A DNA stretch of 61,451 nt, filler included, from Dugesia japonica (lineage: Eukaryota): the NCBI GenBank assembly GCA_001938525.1. It is 5 parts of 5 records of this genome, joined end to end, with 100 filler letters (N's around TTAATTAATTAA, not from the genome) between each part and the next. Parts side by side here need not be neighbours in the genome. Positions count along the whole stretch, not along the records: positions 26,115 to 42,336 come from MQRL01594309.1; 4 more parts are not named here. One strand, 5' to 3'. The first letter of the stretch is position 1, and every line of letters starts with the position of its first letter. The notes below the pieces were generated by a model that was not told the DNA's origin, searched no databases, and saw only the letters and a list, made by a program, of their open reading frames with translations. Shown here in pieces: positions 11,886 through 43,640 of the stretch. The position numbers and the translations under genes are program-made.

Positions 11886-11888
11886 TTT

Positions 11889-12506: not shown

Positions 12507-12525
12507 AAAAAAAAAAATAAAAAAA

Positions 12526-12655: not shown

Positions 12656-12659
12656 TTTT

Positions 12660-13344: not shown

Positions 13345-13477
13345 CATTTCGACAATTGTCGCTATATTTATACGATAAAGATACGCATATTAAAACTGCA
13401 AAAGAATTTTGTACTGCTTGAGCCATAGATTCCATCACGTTTTCATGATCTGTTATATTGTATCTGTCAATCCAAAT
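13345..13477 (-). CDS. internal exon of a TIR-domain (TIR_2-type) protein
   Basis: tttcag|exon|gtaagc, 133 nt, open: IWIDRYNITDHENVMESMAQAVQNSFAVLICVSLSYKYSDNCRN. Matches the invertebrate TIR_2 pattern VWID...AMAxAVExS..VLIC.S..Y..S.NCR.E. Confidence 0.85.
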
Positions 13478-13805
13478 CTGAAACAATTAAGTATTAAATT
13501 GTTTTAATCAAATTAACTAGTAGTAAATAGTTTGTTCCAACAAATAATTTGCATACTACGCCTAATTTGATGTAAATAAAAAAATAAAATAATCGATTTT
13601 TTACATTAAACTGCAAAATTTACGCAATTAAAAATTAAAAAATAATCTTTAAGGTCAACTTAAGTGTGAAAATTCACACTTAAGGTGACAAAGTTCATTG
13701 TTTACATCAATGTGTCAAAATTGACAGTTATTGTTGTTTACATTATGAGGTGTGAACTGACATGTTAATCATCTGAGCCAGACAGGTCACTTCCACCTAC
13801 TATTG

Positions 13806-13880
13806 CAGTGGTGCACAACATACGGCCTATGAGCCGGATGCGACCGGCAACTATGTGACATGCAGACCGCGACCCAAGTT
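13806..13880 (+). mobile_element. hAT element terminus (single end)
   Basis: CAGTGGTGCACAACATACGGCCTATGAGCCGGATGCGACCGGC, a typical hAT-Charlie end. Confidence 0.6.
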
Positions 13881-14962
13881 CATGAAAAATACAAACTGTA
13901 TTTTCTTATAAAAATATAATTCTAAGCAACCAATATTTTACGAATTCATAACGATCTCCTCTAAAATACTAGCTACAAAATGAAAATTTAACAGTGCTAT
14001 ATATATTTTTAAAATTATATAGTATAGTATCTATGTCATCAAAAAAGATTAATAGTTGAATAACTTGAATAACAAATCTAATCTCTGTTTGAAGGCTTTG
14101 CTTTCTTTCTGTTTGAAATGTTACTTAGTTTTTGTTTAGATGGTAGTCTTGAAATAGGTAATATTTTGTCCCCTATTCTGGCGATAATTTTAATCATTAT
14201 CATTTTACTAGTAAATATATATAACTTGCTTTTTCAAATGTAATATAAATAAGTAAATAAGGTTTAAACTTCCAGTTGTCTTCTATAACTTGAGGGGATA
14301 CTATCTCTATTTAAATATGGAATTAGTAAAATTTTAGATTGGAATATTTCTTTTTTTCCAATTATTAGTGAAAAATTATTTAGTTTAACTGCACATATAA
14401 ATGATACAACTGTGAAGTTTATAGATAATTACCAATTCATTAATTCTTCCTTGGACAATGGTGTTAGAACAATTAATTCAACTCCATTAACATCAAATGA
14501 ATTTAAGGATTGTAGACTAAATAAGATTAAGGGGATTTATCCTTATAATTTTGTGCCTAGTTTAGGGTTTTATAGGAAACATAAATAATATCACCAATTT
14601 TGAATAGAGTTAGTGAAGAAAATTACTTGAAAGCTATTGAGATTTGGGAATTTTGTATTTGTAAGAATCTTTTGGACTATATGATGGTCTATTTGAAACT
14701 TGATCTTTTCCTTTTAGTGTTTAGAACATAATAGTTTAGAACCACTTAATTTCTTTGGTATTCCTGGAATAAATTGGTCTTCTTCCTTGAGAACTTTAAA
14801 TTAACCTAAAATTACTTTTAACTGACAATGATATGTACACTTTCTTTGAAGGTGGTATCATAGGAAGTATAACATTTGTAAATAGGCACCATAAAGTTTC
14901 TGATGAGAATACTGAACTTATATACATTGACATAGAAAATTTGTATGGTTGGGCTTTAAGTT

Positions 14963-15818
14963 GGAGATAAAACTGATACAACAAAAATTGAAGCGATAAA
15001 AAATTTTGGAAGACCTAAATGTGTGAAGAACTTGAGAAGCTTTTTGGAAATACTATAGACGGTTTTTCAATAATTACTCAAAGAAAGCTAGAAGCGTGAA
15101 AGATCTATGTGGAAGTAATAATTAAAAAATTGTATGGTCTAAAAATTTTGATAAAGCTTTTAATGAGATGAAAGATGAAAAGAAACAAAAGTATTAATAT
15201 TGAGATTTCCATATATCAAAAAGATGTTTGTACTAGATACAGATGTGAGCTTTGATGCAATTGGAGCGGTTTTATTGCAAATAGATAAAAAAAATGTGCC
15301 AAATGAACAAAGTAACAACAGTTAGAACATAGGAGGAAACTATAAAATTAATGGCTAATGAACCATTTAAGAATATTTATATTGATATCTGTAGGCCATT
15401 CCAAGAAACCTTAAGAAGAAAAAGATATATATGTGCCATAATACATAAATCTAGAAGATACCTATGCTTAACAGCCCTAGTTAAACAAGATGAGAAATCA
15501 AAAAAGAAAATGATTATGGATAAATGGATACTGAGATTTAGCGCTCGAAAGTTGATACATGTAGATTGTGGGAAGATCTTTGAATTGAAAGCCTTCAAAG
15601 AAATGATAGATTCAATATATATAACAATGTGCTTTTCAAATCCATATCATCATAATACAAACGGGATAGTAGAGCGGCAATTCAGAACGATTAGAGATTA
15701 TATCAGTACTACATTAAAAGATAAAAAGAATAAAAACTGGCATAGTTTATACCAGAAATTAAATATACACTAAATGCAACAAGCCAGAAAACTCTGGGAG
15801 TAAGTCTAGCAGAAGTGA
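14963..15818 (+). mobile_element. internally deleted Ty3/Gypsy pol fragment
   Basis: IKTDTTKIEAIKNFGRPKCVKNLRSF (RT end), FVLDTDVSFDAIGAVLLQ (RNase H start), then integrase IYIDICRPF...IHVDCG...PYHHNTNGIVERQFRTI. Confidence 0.9.
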
Positions 15819-15819
15819 T

Positions 15820-16300
15820 AGTAGTGAGATATGTCCGCACTGCCGCACCCCCTCCCCCCTCCCCCCCCAGCCAGAAAATTTTTTTCGTCAAATTCTTTTG
15901 CGACAAAAACTTTTTAAGAAAATTTTTTTTCTTCAAAATTTTAAAATATTTTTAAAAGTAACTCAAGATCAATGTATGTATGATATCGATGTTTTGAAAA
16001 GTGGAAAAGTTGCGCGCAAGTATGCGTCGCAATGTTCTGTAATTACCTTTTGAAAAATATGATCGGATCAATAAAATATTTGAATTTAAATTTTAAATTC
16101 TTTTTTTAAGATATGGACTTGAAACTATTACCAATCATCTTAAAATTAAAAGTTACCTATACATTGCCTAAGGTACTATGCTTGAAAAATGCTTTGTTTC
16201 GACTCCACATATGTGTTCATACTACTGCACCCCCCCTCCAACCCCTAGCCAGAAAAAATTTTTTCGTCAAATTTTTTTCCGAAAAAAACTTTTTCTCAAA
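15820..16300 (+). mobile_element. putative Polinton-like terminal fragment with two internal direct repeats
   Basis: Starts AGTAGTGAG exactly where the Gypsy integrase stops. Two copies of GCACCCCC...AGCCAGAAAATTTTTTTCGTCAAATT (~15845, ~16227) share the TTCGTCAAA motif with 12526-12655. Confidence 0.4.
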
Positions 16301-16525
16301 AAATTTTCAAAAAAATATTAAATCAGAAACTATAAAAACCGCAAGAACAAAAAATTTGAACCACAAAAAATTGAAGAACAAAATATTTGAACCGCAAAAA
16401 ATTAATGAACCTATTAAACCTATTAAACTTATTACCTTTTAATACTTAAAATACTTAAAATGTACTTTTTAAAAAATATTTATAAGTTTTTATATAGAGT
16501 TTTGTATGGATGTTTATTTTTTCTT

Positions 16526-16662
16526 AGTTAAAAGCCTTGAAATTTCCATAATTATTTATTAAAACAAAAACTATTTATTACTAATGAATTATTTAAACAA
16601 ATAATATCATTTAATATTAACAAATTTTAATTTTAATATCACTTTATAAATTATATATAACT
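16526..16662 (-). repeat. 3' LTR (AGTTA...TAACT)
   Basis: Direct repeat of 20933-21069. Preceded on the minus strand by polypurine tract AAAGAGAGAGAG (16664-16675). Confidence 0.9.
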
Positions 16663-19600
16663 GCTCTCTCTCTTTAATTTTGATTTTAAATTTTCTTTAG
16701 ACATTCAAGTCTTCTCGGTTTAAGCTGATCTACATAACCTATAAGCACCTGATGTTGGCTTATAAATTTACTAATTTTGTAAGGACCCTCATACCTGAAA
16801 CCTTCTTTCTTTAACTTGTGTAGTTCTACTTTCACTAATACTTTTTTCCCTTCTTCAAAATGTCTGGACGTTCGTTTTTCACATTCGTATTTACTTAAGC
16901 TTTGAGCTGCTTTCTGTAAATTTTCCTCTGCCAGTTATTTTATTTCTTCGTGTTTTGGATTTCCTTCTTGTGGTAATCCGTGTAAGACTATCCTTTTTCT
17001 AAAGATAATTTCAAAAGGAGATGGACCTGTCAATTTTTGTTGTTTTTTTGTTGCATTTATTACAAACTGAATTCGTGGAAGTAATTTATTCCAACCTTAT
17101 TCTGTGCAGCTTTTCTTTATCGTAGTTACATTTATATCTTGAAGTGTTCTAATATTTCTTTTTGCTAAACCATTTGATTGATGTTGATATGGGGACGAAA
17201 ATTCTTGTTGAATCTCAAACTTCTCTGCAAGTGACCGCATTAACTTTCCTTTAAATATTTTTGCTCTGTTGGCCAAAAACGTTTTGACTTACCAAAACGA
17301 TATATCCAATTTTCCTTTATTGCCTCAACTATCGAAGTTTTATTATGTTTACTTATTGCAACGAATTACACTAACTTACTATACCTGTCAACCATGACGA
17401 GAAAATATTTCTTTTTGGTTTTCACTTCTGGAAAGTAAGCGATATTCATGATAACCTGTTCTAATAGTCCAAATTCTGTTCTTAGAATAAGAAATTCCTT
17501 TGTTTGCCCAGTATATGTTTTACGCATGTTACATATCCTACATTTCTTTAGTTGATGTTCTACATTTCTTTGCATATTTGGCCAAAAATAACTTACACTC
17601 AAATACTCCGTCAGTCTTTGGCCTCATACAAGAGATAATTCATCTTGTTTAAAATCTATAAGGTCAGGTATCGGTTTTCCTGTCAGTACAATTTTTTTAT
17701 TGTCTACTTCATTGATAATCAGTATTTCATTATCCAACTCAAACATTTCCAGTTTGGAAAAATATTTACTTTTGGTCACCGTTAGAGCTGAGCTTATTAT
17801 TTATCATTCCACTTAAAATATATTCAACGATTTCTCTCTTTATTGGTTCATTTTTCTGTATTTCTTTAATATGGGTTCTATAAAAGTTTGTTTTATCTAA
17901 AGTGTTGATACTTTTAACTCGAGACAGTTTCCTTTTAGCTTCTTGATGTCTGACATTTTAAACAAAGACTCTCTCCTTTCCTTGAAATTCCATCAGCATT
18001 TTCATAAGATGCTTCTTTTTGGAATTCTAATTCAAAATTAAATTCTGTTAGATTTTTTATCCATGTTTGAAACTGAGAACTAATGGGCTTACTAGTCTTC
18101 GTCATAAAAGTCAATGCTTTTTGATTCGTTCTTGCTCTAAATTTGTTGCCATACAAATACTGTTTAAAATACATCATAAACTAATGCAGAGCTAACAATT
18201 CATTGCGAGTAACACAATATCCTTTTTCGTGATAATTTAAAGTTCGAGAACTATATGCTATGACATGTTCCAATACATTTCCCGTTATTTGACTCCAAAC
18301 CACTCAAATTACTCCAAAAATCGCATCAGTATCCAATATCATTTTGTCCCTATTATTTGGAAAGTCAAAATCGGAGCACTACGCAATTTTATCTTCAAAG
18401 ATTGAAAACTATCCACACATTCTTTTGTCCATTCAATGTTCTTTTCAAATCCTGTTGTCGCTGCATACAATGGTGCTGCAAGTAAAGCATAATCTTTTAT
18501 AAAACGTCTGTAATAATTTGTTAATTCTAAGAACGCTGGTATTTGCGTGACACATTTTGGCATTACGGCTTCCCCAACTTTTTTGATGAGTTCATCATTT
18601 GTCTGTACACCTTTAACGCTAATTGTATGTCTTAAAAAATTCAATTTCTGGAAATTGAACACACATTTACTTGGATTTACTTTTAAACCCGCATATTTTA
18701 GTAGCTGAAAAATCTTACCAACTTGTTTGTCGTGCTCCTCTTTAGTTTTACCATATACAAAATATCATCTAGATATACTAATACTCCTTTGTACAACGTT
18801 CCTTCAAATATTTCATGCATCAAGCTTTGAAATTGTGCTGATGCAGTACATAATCGAAAGGACATTCGATTAAAACAAAATTGAACTATCTTTGTACTAA
18901 AGGCCGTCTTTAGTTTTGATTCTTCGCTTAGTTTAATTTGATAATATGATTGCCTCAAATCTAAAGAAGAAAATAAGACTCATTCTTCAAGCGTATCTAA
19001 TAATAGTTGAATACCTGAAAGTGGAAACAAATACTTTTCTGTAATTGAATTTAATTTTTTAAAATCAAGACACATTCTTATCGTTCCATCTTTCTTTGGT
19101 ACAGTTACCAATGGGGAATTTTATGGACTTCTGCAACTTCTTATAAGATATGATTTTCTAAGATTTTCTAACAATTCATCTATTTTATTTTCCAAGTGCA
19201 TTGGCTGTCGTCTCGGGTTTCTCATTATTGGAGGTCCTGTTGTTTCGTTATGAGGTTGTATCAGTTTGGTATATCTAAGATCAAATATTGATGACATAAA
19301 TATATCTTTTTAAGTTTCTATCATTGCTTTTACTTCTTGACTGACATTATTTGAAGTATTTAAGTCATTTTTTACTTTTTCTGTATTATCGGTAAATAGA
19401 TTTCCATCATTTGAGTTAATAAAATCAACTTCAGTGATTTTCATCTTATCAATACTTCCAATAAAATTTGGACAAATATTTTTAACAATTACTACTTCTT
19501 TCTCTTTTAGCTTCCCATTTCATTGTAATTTTAGTTTAGTTTTCCCGATACATTTTTCTCTTTTTTTAGAAAACACTCTTGCTAGAACAATTTGTGACGA

Positions 19601-20932
19601 CAATATATCATTGGATCTAATTCTTCTCTACACATCCACACTCATGACTCATATTGCTGCTCCTGAATCCCACAACATCTCAATATCATATCCATCGCAA
19701 CGCATTAAACTTCATTCTCTTCCATGTCTCTTCTGAAACATCTTATCATCGATCATCAATTTTTCATCTCGAAGTATTTTCTCTGTGATTGCAACCTCAC
19801 TGAGGAGATGGATGCAGTGGGTTGCTGATTGTTTTTTTTATCATCATCGTCTAAAGAAACATCGTGTATATACTCAATTTATTCAACACAGTAAGATACC
19901 ATATCATCTTCTTCTGCAATGCATAATATCTTCGGAAATGTAGAATTTCTTAATCGAATTAATGGACAATCTGAAAAATCATGACCTTCTTTTCACATAT
20001 TAAACATTTGTCTTTTAATGGACAATTCATTCAGCTATTTTTTGTATCTCTACAGCAGAAACATGCTTCTGGTGCTAAAACGTTTTCGCGCGGAGGATTC
20101 TTTTCTTTGGCTTTACAATAAAGCTTATTGACTATACACTTCATCAAGAATGCAGGAAAACTATTGTTTCGAGCCCATCTTTGAGGCTAAATTTTATTTG
20201 CACAATACTGATTCTCTTTGAAAACAATTGGTCGACTTCTTGTACTTTGATCGTTTTGAGTATTCATTCGTGGATAATTTTTTGAAAATTTTGACTGATA
20301 CTCATCTTTCTTTACTGTATCTGCATAGTTGTATTTTTTACCATTATTAACAGAATATGCCGGTATCAATTTATCCAAATTTTTAGCTAATTCTCGTCTT
20401 TGAATATCAGTAAGTTCTGGTTGAAGAACAAAAGATTCTTTCAATTTTTCGCTTCTTACACCAATAATTACAAATATTGTTGCAATTTCATCTGGAGTTT
20501 TTTGACTAGCAAAAACTTCATTTACTATTTTTCTTACTCTTAACTCAAAATTGCTATATTTTTCAGTTGGGTTTTGTCTTCGACAAAATTGTTATTTTAT
20601 CTACTAGTGTCTCTGAAATTACAAATGATTCACGAAATCATTTTTTGCAGACCTCGTTCGTCAAAATTACATCTTTTTTGCATTTTTTCACACATAATTC
20701 TTTTGCATCTCTTCTCATTAACATATCAAACGCGAATGATAGCTCCATTTGATTAAACGCAGGAAATTTTTTGGTCGTTTGAATACATTCATCAGCCACT
20801 TCAGATGAACCCACGATAAAACTTGGTTTTGGGATAAGTAATTCTTGTGTTGAAGATGGCAGCTTTGCAAAAAATTCTTGCACGATCATCTTTTTCATTT
20901 TTCGTCAGTACGTTTATTTTGGCATGGTCGTC

Positions 20933-21069
20933 AGTTATAAGACTTGAACTTTCCATAATTATTTATTAAAACATAAATTATTTATTAATAATTAATTATT
21001 TAAACGAATAAAATAATTTAATATTAACAAATTTAAGTCTTAATATCATTTTATAAATGATATTTAACT
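20933..21069 (-). repeat. 5' LTR (AGTTA...TAACT)
   Basis: Direct repeat of 16526-16662, followed on the minus strand by a PBS-like sequence. Confidence 0.9.
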
Positions 21070-22429
21070 TTCTTAAAAATTTTTAAATAGTCTTGTAAGG
21101 AATATAAGAGATTTTATTGGTTTCATACAGTTTCTATGAAGATTTATTTATTTTTATAAAGTATTTATACCTTAATCTTAAGTTAAATAGAGTTTTTATG
21201 CGTTTATATAATCTAATAAACCTGATAAACTTCAAACACGAGAAACTTATGTACATAATAAATCAATACAAAGATTTGCTATAAATATTTTATCATGTAA
21301 ATATCATGAAAATATTCATGGAATCCCCTCTATGGTTATTTTATTTATTATATTTTATAATAACCACATACAGAGACTCCATTCTTTGAATATTTTATCA
21401 TGTCATTACTTATTTATTATCCATGTAATTATTTGGTCATTTTAAATATATTTATTTATATATTTTATAAAAATATACTTTGAATACTTTTGTTTAAAGA
21501 AATGTTTCAAGTTTTATGAATTAGTTTTGTAAAAAGTTCCATACTTTATGAATTATTTTTAAAGTTTTCCACACTATATGAACTCAAATTTAAATGTAGA
21601 AACTTTAAATTTCGTTCTATTTTTAAAATATGTTTAAAAGTAATAAATAAAAAATTTAAATTACTAATAGTCTTGTGCGATCTTCCTTTTATTTAATATT
21701 TACTTTTATAGCTTTTATTAAAACATCCCGTTTCAGATACAACTATCATTTGCATTATTGATTAATCACTAACTGATACAAATCATTATAATCAGTTTTG
21801 ACGTTCGCATTAGGCGATACTTCAATAAAAAAAGCAATAAAATTATTAAATCATTTTTTAAAAATTTTATTACTATAATATTTATTTTTAATAATCTTTT
21901 TTAAAGTTATAGTAAGTATTTCGAATATTCGAATAATCGAATATTTTTAAAATTTTTGTATTCGTTATTCGAATAGTTGAAAACCTTGAATATTTGGAAT
22001 GTCTAATGCGACTTCATGTGCCTAAAAAAGTCATTCACTGAAATAATAAAGAAACAAAACAATTGTTATATTGTTGAATAAAAATTGTTTTTCCAACTTT
22101 ATTCCCTTTTTATTATTATTATTATAATTATTATTTTATTAATTTATTTACAGTAATACTTTGACACATGCTTGTACTCTGTACTCTTAGTACACTATAA
22201 TTATTTATTTTTTTCTGATGTCCCATACGTTGTCTCCTTATTTTAAAGAATCAGCTAATGACGTCATTATTTAATACTTGAATTTTTTGTTGTTTTATAT
22301 TACTAAACAAAAACAAAAATTTTGACCAAAATTTAAACCCCCTTTCATATTTTCCTGGCAACGCTACGGACTAGTGATTTCTTTTAATAGTTTTTATATT
22401 AGTTTAATTAATAAAATATCGATTTTAAT

Positions 22430-22760
22430 AAATCACTTGATGGAAATTTCATTGAAATATTTACAAGAAAACTCTTACCCTAAAACCTTTATCAATTAGT
22501 GTATCACAGATCTTCATAACGATTTCAGAATTCGACCAATTATAACTAATCATGATATGCTTTTCTTCTGCTGATTCTTGATTTTTTGTTTTCTTCATAT
22601 CTTCTAATACTTTTTTCTCGTCGCATTCTGAAAATATAAATTAACAAATGAATTGATAAGAACTGACAAATATTCTCAGAAACACCAGAAAATAGAAATT
22701 CAAAAATCATAATTGAAAAACAAAACATTAAAAATCAAAGTTAAATAAAGATATTACCTA
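22430..22760 (+). mobile_element. Penelope-like element fragment (post-RT region), highly degraded
   Basis: YLQENSYPKTFIN resembles the PLE LxxNGYPxxFI motif. Confidence 0.4.
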
Positions 22761-22981
22761 AAAGTTAAATTTGCTATACGTAGATGAATCTACATATTTT
22801 TATAAATATTTACTGTATAAATCAAAGATCTCAAACTCAAACGATCTATTGGGCTGCTTTTGCTAAAATGTGCTAGTCAATGAGACGCATTAATGCTGTA
22901 ATTGTGTAGTTGTAAAATGTAAACTTAAATACTTTATAACATCATATATTATACTAATATTAATTCAACATAAAGTAATTT

Positions 22982-23231
22982 TATTTAAAAAACAAGCTTC
23001 GATCAAAATGTTTTGTTTTTATTGATATTTGATAACAATTTGATATTTCGACCTTGTCTTCTTCAGTCAAAAGTCAATTCCTAACAAAGACTAGGTCGAA
23101 ATATTGAATTTTTATCAAATATCAATAAAAAAAACAAAAAATTTTGATCGAAACTTGTATTTTAAATGAATTCTATAAAACTATCAATGGTTATGCCCAA
23201 CAATTATTCTCGCAATAATAACAATTGTAAA
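22982..23231. mobile_element. short fold-back element with hammerhead motifs in both arms (PLE-derived, non-autonomous)
   Basis: Inverted arms 22982-23066 / 23072-23170, a ~60-bp asymmetric tail, and a 12-bp TSD ATAAAGTAATTT (22970-22981 / 23232-23243). Confidence 0.8.
23036..23068 (-). ncRNA. minimal type I hammerhead ribozyme core
   Basis: Minus strand: CUGAAGA-A-GAC(AAG)GUC-GAAA-UA-UC. The 5' strand of stem I is disrupted at the palindrome centre. Confidence 0.6.
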
Positions 23232-23839
23232 ATAAAGTAATTTGCTCTTAAATTATCTATCTTTAGTATATTTAGTAATTAATGAAAATAATTGAAATAA
23301 TATTCTTTAATCAACAACTAACGCATTTTTTCTGCTAAAGCTGCCAATGTTTGTTCATTAAATTGCTACTAATTCAAACGTTCGTCACTCTACTTACTCA
23401 GCTGACAGCATTGTACCGAACTTTTTTATTTGGGATTTATCTTACGTGATGCAACTAGTCATGAGGTGACACTCATATGTTCTTTGGTGAGTTGCGATCG
23501 CAGAATAGATTTCTTAATCTGCATTGATGAGAATAATTATTAGCCGATATATATACTGCTGAATTTGAGTGGATATCTTTCATAGTGCCCATCTAAATAA
23601 CTTATCCATATTTACTCGTCCATTCATGATTAATCAACCCAATATTCTATTTAGTTTTTGTCATGATACAGACGAAATTATGTCTCAAAGGTGTAAATTT
23701 AATTAAAGTTTAGCAAATTAAAGACTTAATTTATATTTAAACAAGATAGTCAATTACCTAAAATCATCAGACTTAATAATTAAAATTGATAAGATCTGTT
23801 TATTTGTAAACGATTCTAAAGAAAGTATTGACTTGAGAA

Positions 23840-25000
23840 TTACCAACGATGAAAAAAATAATTTGCTTGATCGATATCAAATATTCATTAGATTTAGAAA
23901 AGAACTTTCCATTGACTAATGAAATAAACTTGGTTAAATATGAGAATTATAAAAGTAAATTTCAAGAAGCAAAACCAGATGATTTTGTTCAATTATTCAC
24001 ATGTATATTTGTTTATCTTGGATCAATTTCAGATGAAACAAATAGAATACTAATATCTTCCCTCGTAAAAAACGCATTTGCGCTGTATTCGAGGATTACG
24101 CCTACTGAGCGTTAAATTCGAAGAAAATGCTCAGGACGTTATATTCGAAAAAAGTAAACAAAAAAACTAAATTTAAAACTAATTTGCTAAAAATGGTTTT
24201 CTAAAGAAATTATCAATTAAGTGATTTTAAAAATTATTGGTTTATATTTTAAATTCAAATATTATAATATTTATATAATCAAAGAAAAATGACAATTCTT
24301 TAATAAAAACTTTCAAATGGTTTATTGGAGACATTGCATAATTGATTAAATTATCAGAAATTTTAATATATAATAATAATATATAATAATAATGATAATA
24401 AAAAAAAGAAGAATAGAAAAGAAACAAATACATTAATTAAACTACCATATATCAATGAAAAATGTAGTCAATTGATGCAGAATATTATTTATAAATCAAA
24501 GATTATATATTCACCTAGGATAATATTAAAAACACAAGCACCCTTAGGAATTCAACTAAAAAAAACAAGGAAAAACTCATGTGGGCCAAAATTCATATGT
24601 AATAAAAAAATGTAACTTATGAAATTACTTGTATCACATGCAACAAATCATACATAGGCAAAACCTTTAGAACAATCAGAACCAGAATCAGAGAACATAT
24701 AAAAAAGAATGAGAGTGAAGTATATAAACATTTCATACACGATCATAATATTCATGCTGACTACAATATTATAAAATGGAAAATAATAGATTCCTACTAT
24801 ATATCAACACTCCCTAGAAAAAAACACGAAGAAATTTTAATCAAAATATTTAAACCAGATATTAATATAATTTTTAATAATATTATCCAAAAAAAATGAG
24901 GATAAAAAGATTTAATTTAAAAAAATTTATATTAAACTTCAAATTGAATAAATCAATCACAATTCCTGAAAAAGATAAATTCGAAAATTTGGAAAAAATA
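23840..25000 (+). mobile_element. Penelope-like element remnant (GIY-YIG endonuclease and 3' pLTR)
   Basis: IKLPYINE and VTYEITCITCNKSYIGKTFRTIRTRIREHIKKNESEVYKHF (GIY-YIG). Degenerate hammerhead CAATTCCTGAAAAAGATAAATTCGAAA at ~24960. Confidence 0.8.
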
Positions 25001-25329
25001 AAAAACGTTTTTTGAAAAAGTTTTTGTTATTTTAATGAAATTTTTAAAAAGAAACATTTTCTTGAAACTTTTTTGATATACGCCTAAGTTTATTTTCGTA
25101 ATTTTGAAAATATTTAATTTTTTTATATAATAATTTCTTTTTAAAAAAGGATGAAGTATTCTTTAAATATTAATTGTTTAAATTTTAATATTAATTATTA
25201 TTGTTAAATTCCCAAATTAAAATATGAATGTTAAAAGAAGGTCATATATTTTTAAATTTTAAAATACAATTAATATTGCCTCCAAATAATAAAAAAGTTG
25301 ATTTGTTATTTTACAGTAAATAAAAAAGA

Positions 25330-25870
25330 AAAGTTATATTTTCAATATATGTACAATAATATTGCAACAATAATTGATGTCATTTATGATTAATATTGAC
25401 AGCAACTCCTCTTGAAGCAGTAATCTGGTTAATGGTCCGATACATCGTGATGAAGAGAGAACTAAGTATTCTTTCTTCAGTTGACCAAAATGTTGTTTGC
25501 AGTACGGTCCACAATGAATGCAGATGGTGATTGGCTTCATTTATTCGAAAAATGAAACAAGCCGAGAATTTTTAATTCTGGAGATTAAGCTGACTGGTTC
25601 GTAAAAGTGACGTTTTTATATAAACTGTCCCCAAAATCATTAAACTTTTGTACGATGTTTTTTTCAACATATGGACAAGCATTATCCATTTGAAAAAGAA
25701 GGTTTTTGCACTAGTGAATCTTGTTTGAGATTGCAGGTATCGTTTCATTATACATCAGCTTCTAAAAGATTAAGTAAATCATTGTGCAATCAACTTTGTA
25801 AACATCAACTTTTGTGTAGTTTTTTGAAGATCACTGGGCTACGTGGTCTTCTTGAATCATCCAAATACCG
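25330..25870 (-). mobile_element. Tc1/mariner transposase C-terminal remnant, DD39D-like
   Basis: FFQMDNACPY...VTFTNQSA*SPELKILGLF resembles QQDNAxPH...QPPNSPDLNxLDLGFF. Confidence 0.6.
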
Positions 25871-25877
25871 ATTAGAC

Positions 25878-26014
25878 AGTAGATATATAGTGGCGGACGT
25901 AGCCAGCACACATTCAGCGAACCTCCCCCCGACGTAATCAGATTATTACATAACTGTTTTTAAATTTTTCTAATGTAAATAGGTGGCGGCACACATTTGT
26001 GTGCGTTACATAAT
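25878..26014 (+). mobile_element. putative Polinton-type terminus
   Basis: AGTAGATATATAGTGGCGG...CACACATTCAGC...CCCCCCGACG, homologous to 11889ff. Confidence 0.45.
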
Positions 26015-27041
26015 NNNNNNNNNNNNNNNNNNNNNNNNNNNNNNNNNNNNNNNNNNNNTTAATTAATTAANNNNNNNNNNNNNNNNNNNNNNNNNNNNNN
26101 NNNNNNNNNNNNNNTTTAAATTATCAATTTCATTTTATTGAATTGAAGTTTTATTTACAGCTCTGACAATATTTTAAATATTTATGTTACAGACTTCTCT
26201 TTTCATCATCAAATTTCTATATAAAAAATGTTACAAAGAAAATTTGAATATCCAACTAATCTATTTTATATATTTACAATAAAGAACAAGAAATTTTTGG
26301 AAATCTAATATATAACACTACATTAATAGAATTGTTATTAATTAAATATTTAACATTAAATGATTATAAATAATTGACGTTTTTAGTATTTAACACTTTT
26401 AAAACTTTTAATATTTAAAATTCATGAAAATATTAAATCGAGTTAAATAAATAAAATTTCCTTTGCAGTATTATGTTGAAAAATCTTAAGTACTAATCAT
26501 CGTGAGAGATCCGACCTACTAAAATATTAAAACANAAAAATATACTAGCAAAAATCGACGATAATAAAAGTAATTATTAAAATTTTAAAAAAATAATGAA
26601 AATGAAACAATCACGAAAATAATCTAGTTTTAAAAGTTTCATTTTTCCACAGGATTGTACAAAGAAATTTTTTAAAATTTAAAAAAAATACAGATATTAT
26701 ACAGTGTCTATCGATTATATATTTTTGTCATTACTGCATATTATTTAATTTTTCCATTTTATAGAGGAACATAATTATTGCAATAAAATGCCATGTCTTA
26801 GAAGAAACATTCAGAAATGTTTTCAATGAATAATTCAGATATAGGTAATATGAAATTTAAAAAGAACACTTTAGTTGGTGGTTAAAAATAACTAGTAGAG
26901 AATATGAAATCGCAAATCTGTATGGATAGAATAGATAGATGGATAGATAGCTATAATTTCCTAAAATAGATTATGTACTATANNNNNNNNNNNNNNNNNN
27001 NNNNNNNNNNNNNNNNNNNNNNNNNNNNNNNNNNNNNNNNN

Positions 27042-27774
27042 GATGAGTTTGGATTGAAGCCTCTACGATTCATTTCATTACCAGAATTGAGTTGATCAAA
27101 TGCTCTCAAGTTAATGGATAAGCCAAAAGAATTACTACAGGATGCAGAAATGCATTATCTATTTGAATTAATAATTCATGGAGAAATGGCGTTTGTGTAC
27201 AAGCAATACTTTCGGGCAGATGAAAATACCTCACTATTTTACATTCATGTTACTAACTTATGTGTTTAGGCTTTAACACAGCCTTTATCATATAAAGAAT
27301 TTGATTTTATATTGGAAAGATCAAATTGACGAAACATACCGAAAGATGATAGTCAACAATAACAATAAAGAAATTAGATACCTTCTTAAAATTGATCTTG
27401 AAATACTTATCCAACATCGTGATAGATTAGATCAATTACTTCTGGCATCAGAACACGAATGTTTTTCTGGATTAAAATTAAAGAAGTTGCTTCTGACACA
27501 CGAACCATAAGACATTATGTTGTACATTAGCGATTATTAGAATTGTATATAAAGCTCATATGACTGCAGTGCATAGAATAGTACAGTTCAAATAAACGAA
27601 AAGATTTTCCAATTATTTTAATGCAAATTCTGTGACAGAAGCGGAATCAGAAACCAAATTTGAATAAGACTTTGACAAACTATAAAACAGGGGAGAATTT
27701 GAAGAAGTGCATTAATTTCCGGCTATGTAATAACGAGAAGAAATTTATAACTTGCATCAATCAATCTTACTTCA
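27042..27774 (+). pseudogene. protein-primed family B DNA polymerase (Polinton/adintovirus type), 5' part
   Basis: FGLKPLRFISLPELS*SNALK, SLFYIHVTNLCV*ALTQPL (degenerate YxDxNxLY..AM.QPLP), YLLKIDLE, KKLLLTH, FE*DFDKL, NNEKKFITCINQSYF. Confidence 0.85.
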
Positions 27775-27889
27775 GTCCTTCTTCGATGTCCATTATTTTC
27801 TTGAATATAAATTTATTGATGTAAAAACTCAAACTATAATGGTAATTCTTTAAATAAATAATAGAACACCATATTTTAAAATATTTATT

Positions 27890-27934
27890 AAATGCGATCA
27901 ATTTCGATGGAATAACCGTCATCATCAGGCAATT
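27890..27934 (-). ncRNA. hammerhead ribozyme (PLE pLTR), one stem II mismatch
   Basis: Minus strand: AAUUGC-CUGAUGA-U-GACGG(UUAUU)CCAUC-GAAA-UUGA-UC-GCAUU. Confidence 0.75.
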
Positions 27935-29208
27935 AAAGAATGTTAAAACAAACTATTTGCAAAGTTTAAATGATTATATAATGTCAATTATGCAATATCA
28001 ATAAATTTTCAATAAAATAATTTTGAGAGAGATGTTGAATCCGTCAACTGAACATTAATTTTAGAATTTAATGCACTTATCAACAAAACTTCACACATCA
28101 CTCTCTCCCAATAATTATTAAATCCACTGCACAANATTTTAAAATCATAAAACCCTATTGATTTTATACATTTTCTTCGATGCTCAACAATATTACTATT
28201 TCCACTATTTCAACTATAATCCTGTAATCTTGCGCAGAGATGACGGGAAGTCTCTCCAATATATGTAACGTTACACCCATTGCATTTAAATTGACAGACC
28301 AGATCAGAGCACAAGCCTAAAGAGGTTATAGATTTATTTTTGAACATATTTATAACCTTATGAGGTTGAGATACAACCTTTATATTTAAAATATTCTTAA
28401 GAGCATTTTCAATCGCAAGTTTGATTTTTTTAAAGCCTTCAGAATAAGGTAAAGATAAAATAATTCTAAGATCTGTTTCTACAAAATCACATACATCAAC
28501 ACGCAACAAGTCACTACTTATTTCATTCAAAGTTTCATAAACTAATTTGTCCGTAAATAATTTAGAATACCCATTATTATGAAGTAAGTCAATTAACTTA
28601 TTTAGACTCTTGTCTAATTTGATAAAAGTACAAGAGAGAGACTATGAACGACGAATTAGTGCTTTAATCATATTACTTTTATATTTTATGTCACAAAAAC
28701 TTGCAGGATTTGTAAACAAATCGGTATCAGTTTTNTTTCTATGTATTTCTGTTTCAAAGGAGGTATTCTTTCTTTCAATAAGCAAATCAAGAAATGGAAT
28801 AATTGAATTGATCTCTTCTTCAACTGTAAAGCCTATATTTGGATTCATGTTATTCATATACTCTAAAAACGAATGTTATTGAGAACGACTTTCAAAAACT
28901 AGAAAAATGTCATTGACATAGCATTTATAATTTAAAGGTTTAACAGAAGAATAATAATAATTAACTTCTGTTAAATCTTTAATGTATAAACGTTTTGTAC
29001 TAGTAGATGACATGTTTCTTGTTTTTGAAAGTCATTCTCAAGTACATCCGTTTTTGGAGTATATGAATAATTTGCATTCAAATATAGGCTTTCAGTTGAC
29101 GGATTCAAAATCTCTCTTAAAATGATTTTATTGATTATTGATTGAGATTACATAATTGAAATTATACAATCATTTAGACTTTGTAAATAGTTTGTTTTAA
29201 TATTCTTT

Positions 29209-29252
29209 AATTGCCTGATGATGACGGTAATTCCGTCGAAATTGATCGCATC
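29209..29252 (+). ncRNA. hammerhead ribozyme (PLE pLTR), intact core
   Basis: UGC-CUGAUGA-U-GACGG(UAAUU)CCGUC-GAAA-U(UG)A-UC-GCA: complete catalytic core, 5-bp stem II, minimal stem III, AUC cleavage triplet. Confidence 0.85.
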
Positions 29253-29337
29253 TAATAAATATTTTAAAATATGGTGTTCTATTATTTATTTAAAGAATTA
29301 CCATTATAGTTTGAGTTTTTACATCAATAAATTTATA

Positions 29338-30010
29338 TTCAAGAAAACAATGAACATAGCAGAAGAACTGAAGTCTGTATTGCTGGATAAATACAGTATA
29401 TGCTTGAATAAATCGAAGTATGTTGGCCAGGTTGTACTAGATTTTAGTAAACTGCAAATGTAACAACTCTAATATGAAGAACTTTTAAGATATCGATATC
29501 AGTTTCATTGCAAAAATTTATATAATTGTGAGGATACTGACAGTTGGTTTTTTTGTGTACCAGAGTAGATAAAACCCAACTCTTGTCTCAGATGAAATTC
29601 GACGGTCTGCTAGACACAAGCAATTATTGAAAAGATCATTCACTCTCTATTTCATCAATTTGGCCAATAGAATTGGATTATTTAAAGATGAAGGACAACA
29701 TAAAGATTTTACTGAATGGGTATTCCTATGGCCAAAATGTTTAGTTTGAAGAAAGAAGATGCTAGTACAATAATGAAGGCAAACAAAATCATTTTAAAAC
29801 AAAACAATCATCAAAACTATTTGAATGCGTTCAATAAAAATGGATAACAAGAAGAAAAAGAATCAAACAATGTAATGCAGACTAGCTTCCGATCAATAAA
29901 TCATCAAGTTTAGAGAATAGAGAGTAAGAAATGTATTTTGTCATGTCTTGATGATAAGAACTTTTGGAGTGGAAAAAATACTACCATATCCTATGGCCAA
30001 TATAAAATTA
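29338..30010 (+). pseudogene. protein-primed family B DNA polymerase, 3' part
   Basis: FKKTMNIAEELKSVLLDKYSICLNKSKYVGQVVLDFSKLQM, DTDS, LDTSNY, IGLFKDE, FRSINHQV, LSCLDDK...SYGQYKI. Confidence 0.88.
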
Positions 30011-30379
30011 ATAATTCAATAATAAGTATAAAATCGCTGTTTTAATGAGTTGAATTGAATACCGATTAGATACAATGGCTCGAATTAACGTTATGAGTTG
30101 TTTTAATAAATTACGAGAACTACATTTAGAAAGTAATGATGAAAGATTGCGTTATGGAAATGATAGTACACTTGAAATTGTTGGGGAAGTTAGATAATTG
30201 ATGGCAAGATAATTTCTTAGTTTGCCGAAAGAGTGACACCAGATCTGATAGGAGAAATAGATATGCAGAAGATTTTTTGAGTTATACAAAAAGTCAATAG
30301 CAAAATGGATGAAAAGGTTGAAAATTACGTTTGTAATATTAAACCATAATTTGGAAGACATGTTTAAAAGGGGGAGCGA

Positions 30380-34379: not shown

Positions 34380-34717
34380 GGCAGCATTGAAATGACCAAC
34401 CTTTTCACAGATTTCAATTAATCTTGTTTAGTAGTGAACAACGCAATTATTGTTAAAACATCACCAATATCTAGTCTCAATTCTGAAAAAGGCGTAAAAT
34501 TTCTCACAGCAAAGCGCTGTTCAAAGGTTTTACACCAATATCTGACATCAATTGTCTTTGTTGATTCACTACGGCTGGTAAAGTGAGTTCTACATTTTGG
34601 ACATTCAACATGATCATTAATTATTCCCAAAGCTTTCATAATAGACACTTTTGATTTGCAATCACGTTTCATTCTGCTAATAACTTCATTAAATTGGAAT
34701 TGATGTAACATAATCAT
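34380..34717 (-). mobile_element. Merlin/IS1595(ISXO2)-like transposase N-terminal remnant
   Basis: LGII...ECPKC...RYWC....FAVRNFTPFSELRLDIGDVLTII fits the Merlin N-terminal Zn-ribbon pattern. Confidence 0.55.
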
Positions 34718-37253: not shown

Positions 37254-37335
37254 ATGGGGCAACGTGTTTCTAGGAGTGATTTTGAATGGGTTTATACTGA
37301 AGAACCTCATGCTACAAGAAGAAAACAAATACTTG
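37254..37335 (+). CDS. DEGS1: exon 1 of sphingolipid delta(4)-desaturase (DEGS1/DEGS2/ifc ortholog)
   Basis: [27 protein letters not shown] followed by a G|GTATGT donor. Matches the conserved DES N-terminus MGxxVSRxDFEWVYTxxPHAxRRxEIL. Confidence 0.95.
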
Positions 37336-38229
37336 GTATGTTCTTGTTTTTATTAAATTTTTCTACTAAATTATTTATTAATTTAAACCTAAAAATTTAT
37401 AATGATAGCATTTTTATTTATATTTCATTTAAAAAATGGACATTTTTAGTGTATTGTTTTACAATTAAAATAAATATAAACAAAATTTTATGTAATTCAG
37501 TTAGAGTGGATATTTGGAGAATATATGTATCAATTATAATTTCCATAAAAATTTCAAAATAAAATTAAGTTTTTTTGTAAAATAATGATTCGAATAAATT
37601 GAAAATTATACATTATTCTCAACGTTACTTAAGATATGCAATTGTAATTTTTACTGTGAGCTTCGGGTAGCATTTCATTATTGGCACAATGAGATTTTTT
37701 ATATGAAATTTATAACATAACTCGATTATATTTATATGTATTATAAGAAGAGCTGTTGAAGTTTTTTTTACAAAGAACAGAAAATAATATATTTAAAAGT
37801 TTACTAAACTATTTTAATTTGAAAAATTTATAATAAAATATCTTAAATTTGATTAAATAATACCAAGTAAAATTTAATTACTTTTTATTTGAAAAAAATT
37901 TAAATTAAAAATTATTTATATTTTATATCGCAATTCGCAGAAACTACCAGGTGCTGTATATAAACCAATATCAGTTGGTTTGCGATAGATTTAACAGATT
38001 AATAAATAGATCTTGGACTCTCTTTTCTTAAATAAAAATCGATATTATAAATCAATTGTAAAAAAATACCTTATGAAACAATTGAAAACATTGTACTTAT
38101 CATGAATAACAATCTAAATGTCTAAAAGGTTATTAAAGACTCAGAAAATTTTAATAAAATCAGTTGTTTTAAATATTCCTAAAAAATTAAATATTTAAAT
38201 ATTTTAAAAATGGTTTCAAAAATATTCAG

Positions 38230-38465
38230 TAAATTTTGAGAATTTTAAGATTGTCTCAGTCTTCAAAAATTATTAATACGTTCGGTAATAAGTCTAAGAC
38301 TCGTTATGGATTGGATTTTAATATTTATTTATAAATATACCACTTGCGTTGGAGAGACTTCCCGTAATCTCTGTAAAAGAATTCAGGAACACAGTCGGTT
38401 AGGTAGTCACAGCAATATTGCAGAACATAATATTCAGTGTAAATCAGTTGTTAATATTAACAAAT
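38230..38465 (+). mobile_element. Penelope-like GIY-YIG fragment
   Basis: TCVGETSRNLCKRIQEHSRLGSHSNIAEH, similar to 28210-28300. Confidence 0.8.
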
Positions 38466-38884
38466 ATTGGTTTAAAAGGCGTATTTCTGTGTTTGTCAAT
38501 ATTTTTAAAAATTTTTGTAAAATGATATCCTGAGGTTTTCCATTTTTCAAGAAATACATAAAAGTATTTCATACTTTAAGAAAAAAAGAAGCATATACTT
38601 GCTTTCTTGAAATGTGTATTGATAAAAATATGATTACAAAGTTTATATTTACAAAATCAATAAACAATTGCTTTTCAAAAGAAGACACCAGAAAGATTCA
38701 CATGAAAATTTTAAGAAGGATGTTGGAATGTGAAAATGAAATTTATTTTTTAAAAATAAAAATTTCGAATTAAAGATATTATGTAAGCCGTTCCTAGGTT
38801 TGAAACAACTATTTTGTATTTTTAATTAAAATAATTTTTTTGATCTGCAATACATTGAAAATATCCTATTAAAATTTTCAAATT

Positions 38885-42979: not shown

Positions 42980-43640
42980 GTGACTATGACCTTATTATTA
43001 TTATTCGACCAACATCTAAATATATCATTAAACCTCACCAAACTAAATTGTTTTTTTCCATTCAAATTCCAAGCTTTCTGCTTAAAACTTACCGTTTCTT
43101 TCGAACTGCTTCAAACTACATTAATTTGCTCTATTTCATTCTCCAGTTTATCTTAAGATCGCAAACTTTCTTAAATGTCATCGACGTCATGTAATTTTCT
43201 CAGAAGTAATTTTTCTTCAGCAAAGTAAATTAAAATCTTTGCTACCATGTTTTCCCGNNNNNNNNNNNNNNNNNNNNATAAGTTATTTACCAGTTTTTCT
43301 ACTTTAGGCAAATCTCGTATCATGCTTCTTTCCTTTTGAAACGCTAAACGAAGTCTATCCTGGAATCCTTCTGGCATTTTAAATGTTTCTATATTTATTG
43401 TGTTTCTATTTTCTACATACTTCACAACTAGTTTCTCTTCTATCAGAAACGTTACTAAACGCTCCTGATCTTTTTTTGTGTATTCACATGACTCCAAAAT
43501 ACATTTCGCACTTGAATATAAATTTTGCATGATCTTGTCTTCTGTAGATATTTGACATAAGGCGGTCTGTATTCTCTGTACCAACCGCTACCACCATATT
43601 AGAAGCGGAGCATTTATACTCATTCAAAATAGCTTCAGAC
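42980..43640 (-). mobile_element. possible LTR-retrotransposon gag-like ORF fragment
   Basis: 137-aa intronless, charged, helical ORF. No diagnostic motif recognised. Confidence 0.3.

What the first reader, a model, noticed from the sequence alone, without database searches (positions are those of the whole stretch)
27769..29374. Palindromic Penelope insertion that also carries an inverted copy of ~36 bp of its target DNA
Seen: removing the insert restores the PolB frame ...CAA TCT TAC TTC AAG AAA ACA ATG AAC ATA GCA GAA GAA CTG AAG TCT (QSYFKKTMNIAEELKS). The right-flank target segment 29338-29374 reappears inverted at 27769-27805, outside the left pLTR. That target segment is itself bounded by a 6-bp inverted microhomology (ACTTCA...TGAAGT). 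The insert is one large palindrome centred at ~28958, and its right arm has lost ~770 bp at a CAGTTGA microhomology. Inference: the left-flank 3' end annealed to TGAAGT and primed copy-back synthesis through target and element. This would be a fossil of the PLE second-strand/hairpin mechanism and a possible origin of the 30-40-nt PLE 'tails'.
Basis: partly seen in the sequence, partly recalled or inferred. Interest (0 to 1): 0.7.

Follow-up and report, generated by a model that had tools for sequence, protein, structure and literature searches.

The report
Palindromic Penelope insertion with mirrored flank
Two truncated copies of a Penelope-like retrotransposon sit head-to-head in a decayed repeat, and the mirror symmetry runs 37 bp past the likely element end, probably into copied target DNA; this would be a rare fossil of how such elements finish integrating, but the "element tail" alternative is not excluded.

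Summary
Arms 27769-28050 and 29093-29374 are 92.6% complementary. The symmetry continues to a centre near 28957. The right arm lacks 777 bp between two TCAACTG repeats. The outer 37 bp (32/37 matching) end in ACTTCA / TGAAGT.

The insert is two 5'-truncated copies of a canonical Penelope-like element (PLE), joined head-to-head with their 3' ends outward. This layout is known for PLEs.

New here: both arms carry a minimal hammerhead core whose A9 is the A of an ATG, as in Poseidon_Ac of Anolis. Anchored on the predicted cut site (29247|29248), the published Poseidon tail (+85 to +119) maps to about 29301-29337. Multicopy read depth vanishes by 29301, and base composition switches at 29337|29338. 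So 29301-29337 looks like the element's own tail, and the extra 37 bp lie beyond it. This favours copied target DNA (about 0.57 in total).

It is not proven:
Removing all of 27769-29374 is also in frame.
- No flank homologue and no other copy of this PLE could be fetched.
- No profile scan supports the "PolB" label.
- The idea that PLE tails come from target DNA conflicts with published data.

The parts
27096..27768 (+). Left flank: decayed multicopy repeat, read as a protein-primed family-B DNA polymerase remnant (putative)
   Evidence: Broken frames with polymerase-like motifs read by eye. Summed read depth is 300-1300 against about 10 for single copy, and the repeat is also present in organism B. 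No profile hit.
27769..27774 (+). ACTTCA: outer 6 bp of the inverted repeat. It is either the last 6 nt of the left flank used as microhomology, or the end of an element tail.
   Evidence: Perfect complement of TGAAGT at 29369-29374.
27775..27805 (-). Inverted copy of 29338-29368 (candidate copied target DNA)
   Evidence: 26/31 identical to the reverse complement of 29338-29368. The five differences are at 27777, 27783, 27785, 27790 and 27795.
27806..27895 (-). Left arm, PLE 3' terminal part downstream of the hammerhead cut; 27806-27842 is the tail-like extension
   Evidence: Mirror of 29248-29337. 27796-27890 is 100% identical to the right arm.
27896..27928 (-). Minimal hammerhead core, left-arm copy
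   Evidence: The pattern CTGATGA-hairpin-CGAAA was found only at 27902-27928(-) and 29215-29241(+); 0.04 matches expected by chance.
28012..28957 (-). Left arm, PLE coding remnant: RT from just upstream of YVND (28909-28920), a thumb-like stretch (28645-28857), and GIY-YIG with YIGETSR (28213-28296). The ORF stop is at 28009-28011.
   Evidence: Minus-strand translation. Motif-by-motif resemblance to the Poseidon_Ac protein printed. Summed depth up to about 225,000.
28044..28050 (+). TCAACTG, first copy of the 7-bp direct repeat bounding the 777 bp missing from the right arm (second copy at 28821-28827)
28950..28965 (.). Centre of the palindrome (spacer or loop of about 15 nt)
28958..29214 (+). 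Right arm, PLE body: RT fragment (VLVDD), the deletion joint at 29092|29093, then the ORF end and 3' UTR
29215..29247 (+). Minimal hammerhead core: CUGAUGA, a bulged U, a 5-bp helix II (GACGG/CCGUC), GAAA, and a short helix III containing the palindrome GAUC. Cut predicted after 29247. The ATG at 29221 is core position A9.
   Evidence: Same layout as Poseidon_Ac and as the PLE min-hammerheads described in PMC4209133. Not called by Rfam.
29248..29300 (+). PLE sequence from the hammerhead cut to the usual family end (about +80 from the ATG)
   Evidence: Still multicopy: depth is about 27,000 at 29251, and the bin 29214-29300 averages 43,000-54,000.
29301..29337 (+). Tail-like 37-nt extension of the element (+81 to +117)
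   Evidence: Depth falls to 100-170 in the bin 29301-29387, and to 0 in organism B. Matches the Poseidon_Ac tail (+85 to +119) once anchored on the cut site. AT- and T-rich like the preceding PLE sequence.
29338..29374 (+). The 37-bp segment in question: candidate original target DNA, starting with the 4-bp TTCA that also ends the left flank
   Evidence: GC 0.32, purine 0.70, T 0.16, against T 0.45 in 29248-29337 (p=0.002). In frame and stop-free with the right flank. Contiguous with the flank in independent contigs.
29375..30200 (+). Right flank: the same decayed repeat, with EDTDS at 29530-29544 and GLFKDEG...PK at 29675-29746
   Evidence: An organism-B contig end reads GETDSYF at the same place (table 7). 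No profile hit.

Best explanation
A canonical, endonuclease-bearing Penelope-like element integrated into a decayed repeat.

Proposed sequence of events (inferred):
1. First-strand cDNA was primed on the bottom strand at the right junction (29337|29338). It started at the element's outer internal start site, about 117 nt into the ORF.
2. Synthesis ran back to just upstream of the RT YxDD motif.
3. The cDNA 3' end then snapped back on itself and copied the cDNA. This created the head-to-head second arm.
4. The copy ran on past the element for 31-37 nt into the right-hand target.
5. Its 3' end (TGAAGT) annealed to the ACTTCA end of the upstream target. The joint was sealed by fill-in synthesis.

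The result is an inverted copy of target DNA outside the left arm and a 4-bp TTCA target duplication. Later, 777 bp were lost from the right arm between two TCAACTG repeats, and a 95-bp stretch of the arms was probably homogenised by gene conversion.

Shown: the geometry, the microhomologies, the hammerhead/ATG anchor, the depth boundary and the composition boundary. Inferred: that the 37 bp are target DNA, and the order of events.
For: - Exact palindrome geometry with a common centre. This implies that one arm was templated on the other.
- A hammerhead core in both arms, with the ATG at A9 and a cut predicted at +27. Poseidon_Ac has the same layout, with its cut at about +30.
- The Poseidon_Ac tail spans +85 to +119, between two RT start sites. 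Anchored on the cut site, that maps to about 29301-29337.
- Multicopy depth is gone by 29301 in three runs of organism A and in organism B. So the canonical outer start site is about 29337, and the 37 bp lie beyond it.
- T content drops from 0.45 to 0.16 at 29337|29338 (p=0.002), and GC becomes flank-like at 0.32.
- The 37 bp are stop-free and in frame with the right flank. TTCA occurs at both junctions. A 6-bp perfect microhomology sits at the outer joint.
- Divergence of the 37-bp pair (5/37) equals that of the PLE arms outside the perfect tract (33/280, p=0.79). The two are therefore the same age.
- Snap-back 5' junctions that carry reverse-complemented cDNA or nearby target sequence have been seen experimentally for R2 (PMC11331408). 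Self-priming was proposed for PLE palindromes (PMC3846280).
Against: - No uninterrupted copy of the flank repeat was obtained, so the empty-site sequence is unknown.
- Removing the whole inverted repeat (27769-29374) also leaves the flank frame open, so the frame gives no support.
- 37 nt is exactly tail-sized. The segment is A/C-rich with inverted ends (TTCA...TGAA), which recalls the AC-rich stem-loop in which Poseidon_Ac RT starts.
- An ATG-initiated frame from the hammerhead runs open through the 37 bp in both arms, as a real element ORF would.
- The coordinate transfer from a lizard element to this one is an analogy. The depth boundary is known only at 87-bp bin resolution.
- Inverted target copies have not been reported for PLEs.
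Confidence: 0.42

Rival explanations
1. The 37 bp are element sequence, that is, a PLE tail or a further read-through of the ORF 5' region. On this view both arms began reverse transcription about 154 nt into the ORF. This could happen by priming on both cleaved strands, or by insertion of a free palindromic cDNA. The true empty site would be 27768|29375, a blunt site with no target duplication.
For: - Tails of 30-40 bp at either end of PLE insertion units are well documented and are element-derived.
- Poseidon_Ac protein cleaves and extends both strands.
- The empty site 27768|29375 is also in frame.
- The ATG frame from the hammerhead stays open through the segment in both arms; P is about 0.009 for 52 codons by chance.
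- The segment is A/C-rich with inverted ends, like the Poseidon_Ac start-site stem-loop.
- It is the simplest reading of an inverted repeat that merely extends further.
Against: - By the hammerhead-anchored Poseidon_Ac coordinates, the tail is 29301-29337 and the outermost start site is about 29337.
- Almost no other copy of the family reaches beyond 29300. Two independent starts at the same rare site would be unlikely.
- There is a sharp composition switch at 29337|29338.
- The common centre of the arms points to copying of one arm from the other, not to two independent cDNAs.
Confidence: 0.3
2. The 37 bp are target DNA, but the palindrome arose after integration. On this view a simple 5'-truncated PLE (the present right arm, with a TTCA duplication) was later duplicated in inverted orientation, together with 31 nt of its right flank. 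The cause would be a DNA-level template switch or fold-back repair event primed at the ACTTCA/TGAAGT microhomology.
For: - A 6-bp microhomology at the outer joint, and a duplicated segment that ignores the element boundary, are typical of replication or repair template switching.
- The right arm alone, with TTCA on both sides, looks like an ordinary target-primed insertion.
Against: - The second switch would have to fall exactly at the 5' end of the truncated element, since the centre is near 28957.
- Head-to-head inverted copies are a recurrent property of PLE insertions and need no separate accident.
- Arm divergence equals the divergence of the 37-bp pair, so nothing indicates a later date.
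Confidence: 0.15
3. The target already contained an imperfect 74-bp palindrome (27769-27805 plus 29338-29374), for example a small fold-back element. The PLE then entered at its centre by symmetric cleavage of both strands.
For: - The 37-bp pair shows 5 differences, while the adjacent 85 bp of element sequence (29253-29337) show none (p=0.002).
- Poseidon_Ac cleaves both strands.
Against: - The 37-bp divergence equals that of the rest of the arms. The anomaly is the 95-bp perfect tract, which one gene-conversion tract explains.
- A 74-bp palindrome would break the flank reading frame.
- It requires the element to have landed exactly at the palindrome centre.
Confidence: 0.06
4. Assembly artefact: the palindrome or its outer part was created by a short-read assembler working in a 10,000-copy repeat.
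For: - Single N calls inside the left arm at 28136 and 28735.
- The interior is extremely multicopy.
- No listed contig spans the left junction.
Against: - The right junction (29318-29771) is reproduced as a single-copy contig in three runs from three studies.
- That contig starts exactly where the arms stop being identical, as expected if both arms exist in the reads.
Confidence: 0.03

Closest known systems
Head-to-head (inverted 5'-truncated) insertion units of canonical EN+ Penelope-like elements (PMC8557442, PMC3846280)
   Same: Two 5'-truncated copies are joined at their 5' ends with the 3' ends outward. There is a small palindromic junction, a microhomology-bounded internal deletion, a hammerhead-bearing terminal region, and a 30-40-nt optional tail.
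   Different: Here the symmetry continues 37 bp beyond the position expected for the tail end. By composition and frame, that stretch looks like flank rather than element. Such a feature has not been described for PLEs.
Poseidon_Ac (PAc) of Anolis carolinensis: internal initiation of reverse transcription (PMC11167929)
   Same: The ORF ATG lies at hammerhead position A9. The predicted cut is about 27-30 nt into the ORF. The tail lies about +81/85 to +117/119, between two start sites.
   Different: Most copies of the family studied here appear to end earlier, at or soon after the hammerhead cut and by about +80. The genome is very AT-rich. No biochemical data exist for this element.
Snap-back 5' junctions of R2 target-primed insertions (PMC11331408)
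   Same: Reverse-complemented sequence from the cDNA or nearby target is fused at the upstream junction. It is explained by the cDNA 3' end priming on a nearby DNA strand.
   Different: R2 is a non-LTR element with a different endonuclease. The R2 events are rare products in engineered human cells. Here the snap-back would have copied the whole cDNA plus target and become fixed in a genome.
L1 twin priming / 5' inversion
   Same: An inverted arrangement is produced during target-primed reverse transcription, using the second target strand and microhomology. This comparison rests on my own knowledge and was not checked here.
   Different: Twin priming gives an inversion of part of one copy. It does not give a true palindrome with a common centre, and it does not duplicate target DNA in inverted orientation.

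Membership tests
Canonical EN+ Penelope-like element (Penelope/Poseidon type) | RT with a YxDD motif and the PLE-type thumb region | tested here: inconclusive
   The minus-strand translation shows YVND, and VLVDD in the right arm. It also shows NPNIGFTVEEE..PFLDLLIERK..R.KTDTD, which lines up by eye with HPNIQFTMEKE..PFLDVLVIRK..RKPTHTD of Poseidon_Ac. Pfam gave no hit on the short stop-free pieces.
Canonical EN+ Penelope-like element (Penelope/Poseidon type) | C-terminal GIY-YIG endonuclease downstream of the RT | tested here: inconclusive
   CQFKCNGCNVTYIGETSRHLCARL at 28213-28296(-) lies downstream of the RT remnant. It resembles CSCGQVYIGTTKRSAQTRVKEH of Poseidon_Ac. No Pfam GIY-YIG hit and no database relatives.
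Canonical EN+ Penelope-like element (Penelope/Poseidon type) | Terminal repeat region carrying a minimal hammerhead motif | tested here: met
   CUGAUGA, a bulged U, a 5-bp helix II and GAAA occur once in each arm and nowhere else in the window; 0.04 matches expected. Layout as in PMC4209133 and PMC11167929.
Canonical EN+ Penelope-like element (Penelope/Poseidon type) | High copy number with 5' truncation, and inverted or tandem insertion units | tested here: met
   Summed depth is 35,000-225,000 against about 10 for single copy, and it declines toward the 5' side. The unit is head-to-head inverted.
Hammerhead ribozyme (Rfam models) | Score above threshold for a curated hammerhead covariance model | tested here: not met
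   No hammerhead family was reported at E<=1 on the whole piece or at E<=10 on 29160-29320. PLE min-hammerheads have a minimal helix III and are thought to act as dimers, which may explain the miss.
PLE tail (as the identity of 29338-29374) | Element-derived sequence, the continuation of the element beyond its usual end, found at the ends of a fraction of other copies | not testable with these tools
   Depth over 29301-29387 is only 100-170 summed, so few other loci carry anything similar. Their sequences were not retrievable. DNA and protein searches of public collections gave nothing.
PLE tail (as the identity of 29338-29374) | 30-40 nt lying between the two reverse-transcription start sites | tested here: inconclusive
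   The length fits at 37 nt. However, by hammerhead-anchored Poseidon_Ac coordinates the two sites map to about 29301 and about 29337, which places the tail at 29301-29337 instead.
Protein-primed family-B DNA polymerase of a Maverick/Polinton (as the identity of the flanks) | Profile-level match to the polymerase family, with motifs A, B and C in order | tested here: not met
   - No Pfam, PHROGs or PDB match for any stop-free piece.
- No hit for a 77-aa piece among 1.84 billion representatives.
- Only motif-like strings seen by eye: YIHVTNLCV, LCNNEKKF, EDTDS, GLFKDEG..PK.
- The pieces are short and decayed, so this does not exclude the family.
Snap-back 5' junction of target-primed reverse transcription | Reverse-complemented cDNA and/or nearby target sequence fused to the upstream target, often at microhomology | tested here: inconclusive
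   Reverse-complemented element sequence and the 6-bp microhomology are present. Whether the outer 31 nt are target DNA is unproven.

The most novel reading that the evidence does not exclude
The locus is a fixed fossil of a Penelope-like element integration. In it, the first-strand cDNA folded back, copied itself and then 31-37 nt of the downstream target, and was joined to the upstream target through a 6-bp microhomology. This would be the first genomic evidence that PLE head-to-head palindromes arise by snap-back second-strand synthesis on a target-attached cDNA, rather than by priming on both strands.
Probability: 0.42. Interest if true: 0.6.

Novelty: new variant of a known kind. Interest (0 to 1): 0.45.

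Why it matters
How Penelope-like elements complete integration, and why they form inverted or tandem units with tails, is still open. Only the first steps have been reconstituted in vitro. A palindromic insertion that demonstrably carries an inverted copy of its own target would show that the second arm was templated on a cDNA already joined to the chromosome. That would separate the snap-back model from the two-strand priming model.

The locus also extends the Poseidon_Ac layout (ATG at hammerhead A9, tail about +85 to +119) to a distant, very AT-rich genome. There the element has thousands of copies.

If the 37 bp prove to be element sequence, the locus is an ordinary PLE unit with tails at both ends.

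Tried and rejected
- Pfam, PHROGs and PDB sequence scans of all stop-free flank pieces and of the PLE ORF pieces gave nothing usable.
- The exhaustive HMMER search with the longest flank piece (77 aa, 27277-27507) gave 0 hits.
- Word-indexed protein searches with the 81-aa ORF spanning the PLE end plus flank, and with the GIY-YIG ORF, gave 0 hits. This organism's ORFs seem absent from that collection.
- Exact-pattern scans for conserved PLE 23-27-mers in metagenome, prokaryote-genome and viral contigs gave 0 hits.
- The search for related loci on viral contigs with flank pieces gave nothing.
- The ESM Atlas look-alike search for a flank piece was uninformative.
- Rfam reported no hammerhead.
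- The search of earlier findings was not open.
- Read laying listed only the best-supported joints. A joint that skips the insert, from paralogous empty sites, was neither shown nor excluded.

Readings I considered and dropped:
- That the whole 29248-29374 is target DNA. This is rejected because 29248-29300 is still multicopy at about 10,000-27,000 summed depth and has PLE-like composition.
- That the left 37 bp are the original and the right the copy. This is rejected because that join is out of frame and the left copy is pyrimidine-rich on the flank's coding strand.

The comparison with it is therefore by inspection only.
Full report
**Observation**

- Positions 27769-28050 are complementary to 29374-29093 at 261 of 282 positions.
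- The right arm then lacks the equivalent of 28051-28827 (777 bp). In the left arm this segment lies between two copies of TCAACTG, at 28044-28050 and 28821-28827.
- The symmetry resumes at 28828-28913 with 29092-29007 (87%) and at 28916-28949 with 28998-28965 (82%). The centre is near 28957.
- The outermost 37 bp of each arm (27769-27805 and 29338-29374) match at 32 of 37 positions. They end in ACTTCA and TGAAGT.

**What the insert is**

On the minus strand the left arm encodes a decayed ORF.
- It has YVND at 28909-28920 (VLVDD in the right arm).
- Next comes NPNIGFTVEEE..PFLDLLIERK..R.KTDTD.
- Then comes CQFKCNGCNVTYIGETSRHLCARL.
- The stop is at 28009-28011.

By inspection these line up with the RT motif 5, thumb and GIY-YIG regions of the Poseidon_Ac protein printed. 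Profile scans of the short stop-free pieces found nothing.

The insert is therefore two 5'-truncated copies of a canonical, C-terminal-endonuclease Penelope-like element (PLE). They are joined head-to-head with their 3' ends pointing outward. This arrangement is documented for PLEs, as are microhomology-bounded internal deletions. Palindromes at the inverted junction have been interpreted as self-priming (PMC8557442; PMC3846280).

Contigs of public runs laid on the locus show that the element is extremely abundant. Summed depth is 35,000-225,000, against about 10 for the single-copy flank contigs. The family is also present in a related organism B.

**A coordinate system for the element end**

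Both arms contain CUGAUGA, a bulged U, a 5-bp hairpin (GACGG/CCGUC) and GAAA, at 29215-29241(+) and 27902-27928(-). The pattern occurs nowhere else in the window, with 0.04 matches expected. It is followed by UUGAUC, a minimal helix III that contains the palindrome GAUC.

This is the min-hammerhead layout described for PLE terminal repeats (PMC4209133). Rfam's hammerhead models do not call it.

The A of the ATG at 29221 is core position A9, and the predicted cut is after 29247, which is +27. Poseidon_Ac has the same layout:
- C3 and G8 precede the ATG;
- its cut is at about +30.

In Poseidon_Ac the 34-nt tail spans about +85 to +119. It is the element sequence between two internal reverse-transcription start sites. 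Anchored on the cut site, those positions map here to about 29301-29303 and 29335-29337.

Two independent features of this locus fall at those places.
- Depth: the bin 29214-29300 averages 43,000-54,000. It falls to 100-170 in 29301-29387 for three runs of organism A, and from 1,241 to 0 in organism B. The mirror bins of the left arm agree.
- Composition: at 29337|29338, T drops from 0.45 to 0.16 (p=0.002). GC rises from 0.15-0.19 to 0.32, the value of the flank.

I therefore read 29301-29337 as this element's own tail-like extension. The mirrored 37 bp lie beyond it.

**Target copy or element sequence?**

That argument does not discriminate. The join 27774|29342 gives QSYF-KKTMNIAEELKS. The join 27768|29375, which removes the whole inverted repeat, gives QS-S-VLLDKYS. 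Both are open, because they differ by 39 nt.

Three things favour element sequence:
- the segment is tail-sized;
- it is A/C-rich with inverted ends (TTCA...TGAA), reminiscent of the AC-rich stem-loop where Poseidon_Ac RT starts;
- the frame opened by the hammerhead ATG stays open through it in both arms (P about 0.009 for 52 codons).

Four things favour target DNA:
- the coordinate argument above;
- the composition switch;
- the TTCA found both at the end of the left flank and at the start of the segment, which would be a 4-bp target duplication;
- the common centre of the two arms, which implies that one arm was templated on the other.

A copying process has no reason to stop at the element boundary. 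Two independent cDNAs would have had to start at the same very rare site and also stop at the same place.

I could not obtain the decisive data. No uninterrupted copy of the flank repeat and no other copy of this PLE's outer end could be fetched from any collection.

My odds are:
- about 0.57 that the 37 bp are target DNA (0.42 during integration, 0.15 by a later DNA-level inverted duplication);
- 0.30 that they are element sequence;
- about 0.09 for a pre-existing palindromic target (0.06) or an assembly artefact (0.03); the rest is left unassigned.

**Mechanism under the preferred reading (inferred)**

1. The bottom strand is nicked to the left of TTCA.
2. cDNA is primed at 29337|29338 and extends to just upstream of YxDD.
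3. The cDNA 3' end folds back (the loop is the 15-nt centre) and copies the cDNA.
4. Synthesis continues 31-37 nt into the target.
5. The new 3' end, TGAAGT, pairs with the ACTTCA 3' end of the upstream target strand.
6. Both ends are extended, which unfolds the hairpin into a palindrome.

It has an experimental analogue in R2 snap-back junctions. Those carry reverse-complemented cDNA or nearby target sequence (PMC11331408).

The 777-bp gap lies in the arm that would have served as the template. It is therefore best read as a later microhomology-mediated deletion.

**Age, and an oddity**

The arms differ at 16 of 160 positions in 29093-29252. They differ at none in 29253-29347, which is 95 bp. 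They differ at 5 positions in 29348-29366.

A perfect run of 95 bp is unlikely under uniform decay (P about 0.001-0.002). Outside that run the density is uniform. The 37-bp pair (5/37) does not differ from the rest (33/280, p=0.79). The simplest account is an old palindrome with about 12% arm divergence, plus one arm-to-arm gene-conversion tract. It also means that the 37-bp pair is the same age as the arms.

**Tails**

This conflicts with the literature. Tails are family-specific continuations of the element (PMC3846280). In Poseidon_Ac they correspond to the sequence between two RT start sites.

**Flanks**

The flanks are a decayed repeat of roughly 30-200 copies, shared with organism B. They contain strings that read like polymerase motifs: EDTDS at 29530-29544 and GLFKDEG...PK at 29675-29746. 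An organism-B contig reads GETDSYF at the same place.

No profile or sequence search supports the polymerase assignment, so it remains a reading by eye.

The right junction is reproduced in independent data. It appears as a single-copy 454-bp contig (29318-29771) in three runs from three studies. No listed contig covers the left junction.

**Verdict**

This is a genuine, typical PLE palindrome with one unusual feature that is probably, but not demonstrably, an inverted copy of target DNA. It is worth a follow-up that needs only the genome assembly. It would be of moderate interest to people working on retrotransposition mechanisms.

Noticed in passing
window 29253-29347 and 27796-27890: A 95-bp stretch of the two arms is 100% identical, although the arms differ by 10-18% on either side (P about 0.001-0.002 by permutation). 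It is probably an arm-to-arm gene-conversion tract. Its inner edge lies 5 bp from the predicted hammerhead cut site.
   Followed up: partly
window 29214-29300 (and mirror 27843-27929): Most of the roughly 10,000 copies of this PLE family seem to lose homology at or shortly after the predicted hammerhead cut (about 29247). A minority extends to about 29300. This suggests that in this genome many insertions end at or near the ribozyme cut site, unlike Poseidon_Ac. The resolution is limited to 87-bp bins plus a few spot depths.
   Followed up: partly
window 37254-37340 (+): First coding exon of a sphingolipid delta4-desaturase-like host gene ([28 protein letters not shown]). Pfam Lipid_DES, E=1.9e-11. 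It is followed by GT, which is consistent with a splice donor.
   Followed up: partly
window 38306-38533 (+): A second GIY-YIG remnant from a different PLE family (TCVGETSRNLCKRIQEH). It shares only 40 nt at 85% with the palindromic element.
   Followed up: no
window 28866-28952: Read depth over the element drops about 20-fold between 28779-28865 and 28866-28952. This suggests a very common 5' end of copies, or an abundant short derivative, just downstream of the RT YxDD motif.
   Followed up: no
window 34418-34717 (-): A 99-aa ORF with CPKC...C zinc-ribbon-like spacing. It has only weak sub-threshold Pfam zinc-ribbon matches.
   Followed up: no
window 27744/27745: The single-copy left-flank contig ends at 27744-27745 in all three runs of organism A. 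So the 30-mer 27715-27744 occurs in a second context, either a paralogue or a heterozygous site. Its cause was not resolved.
   Followed up: no
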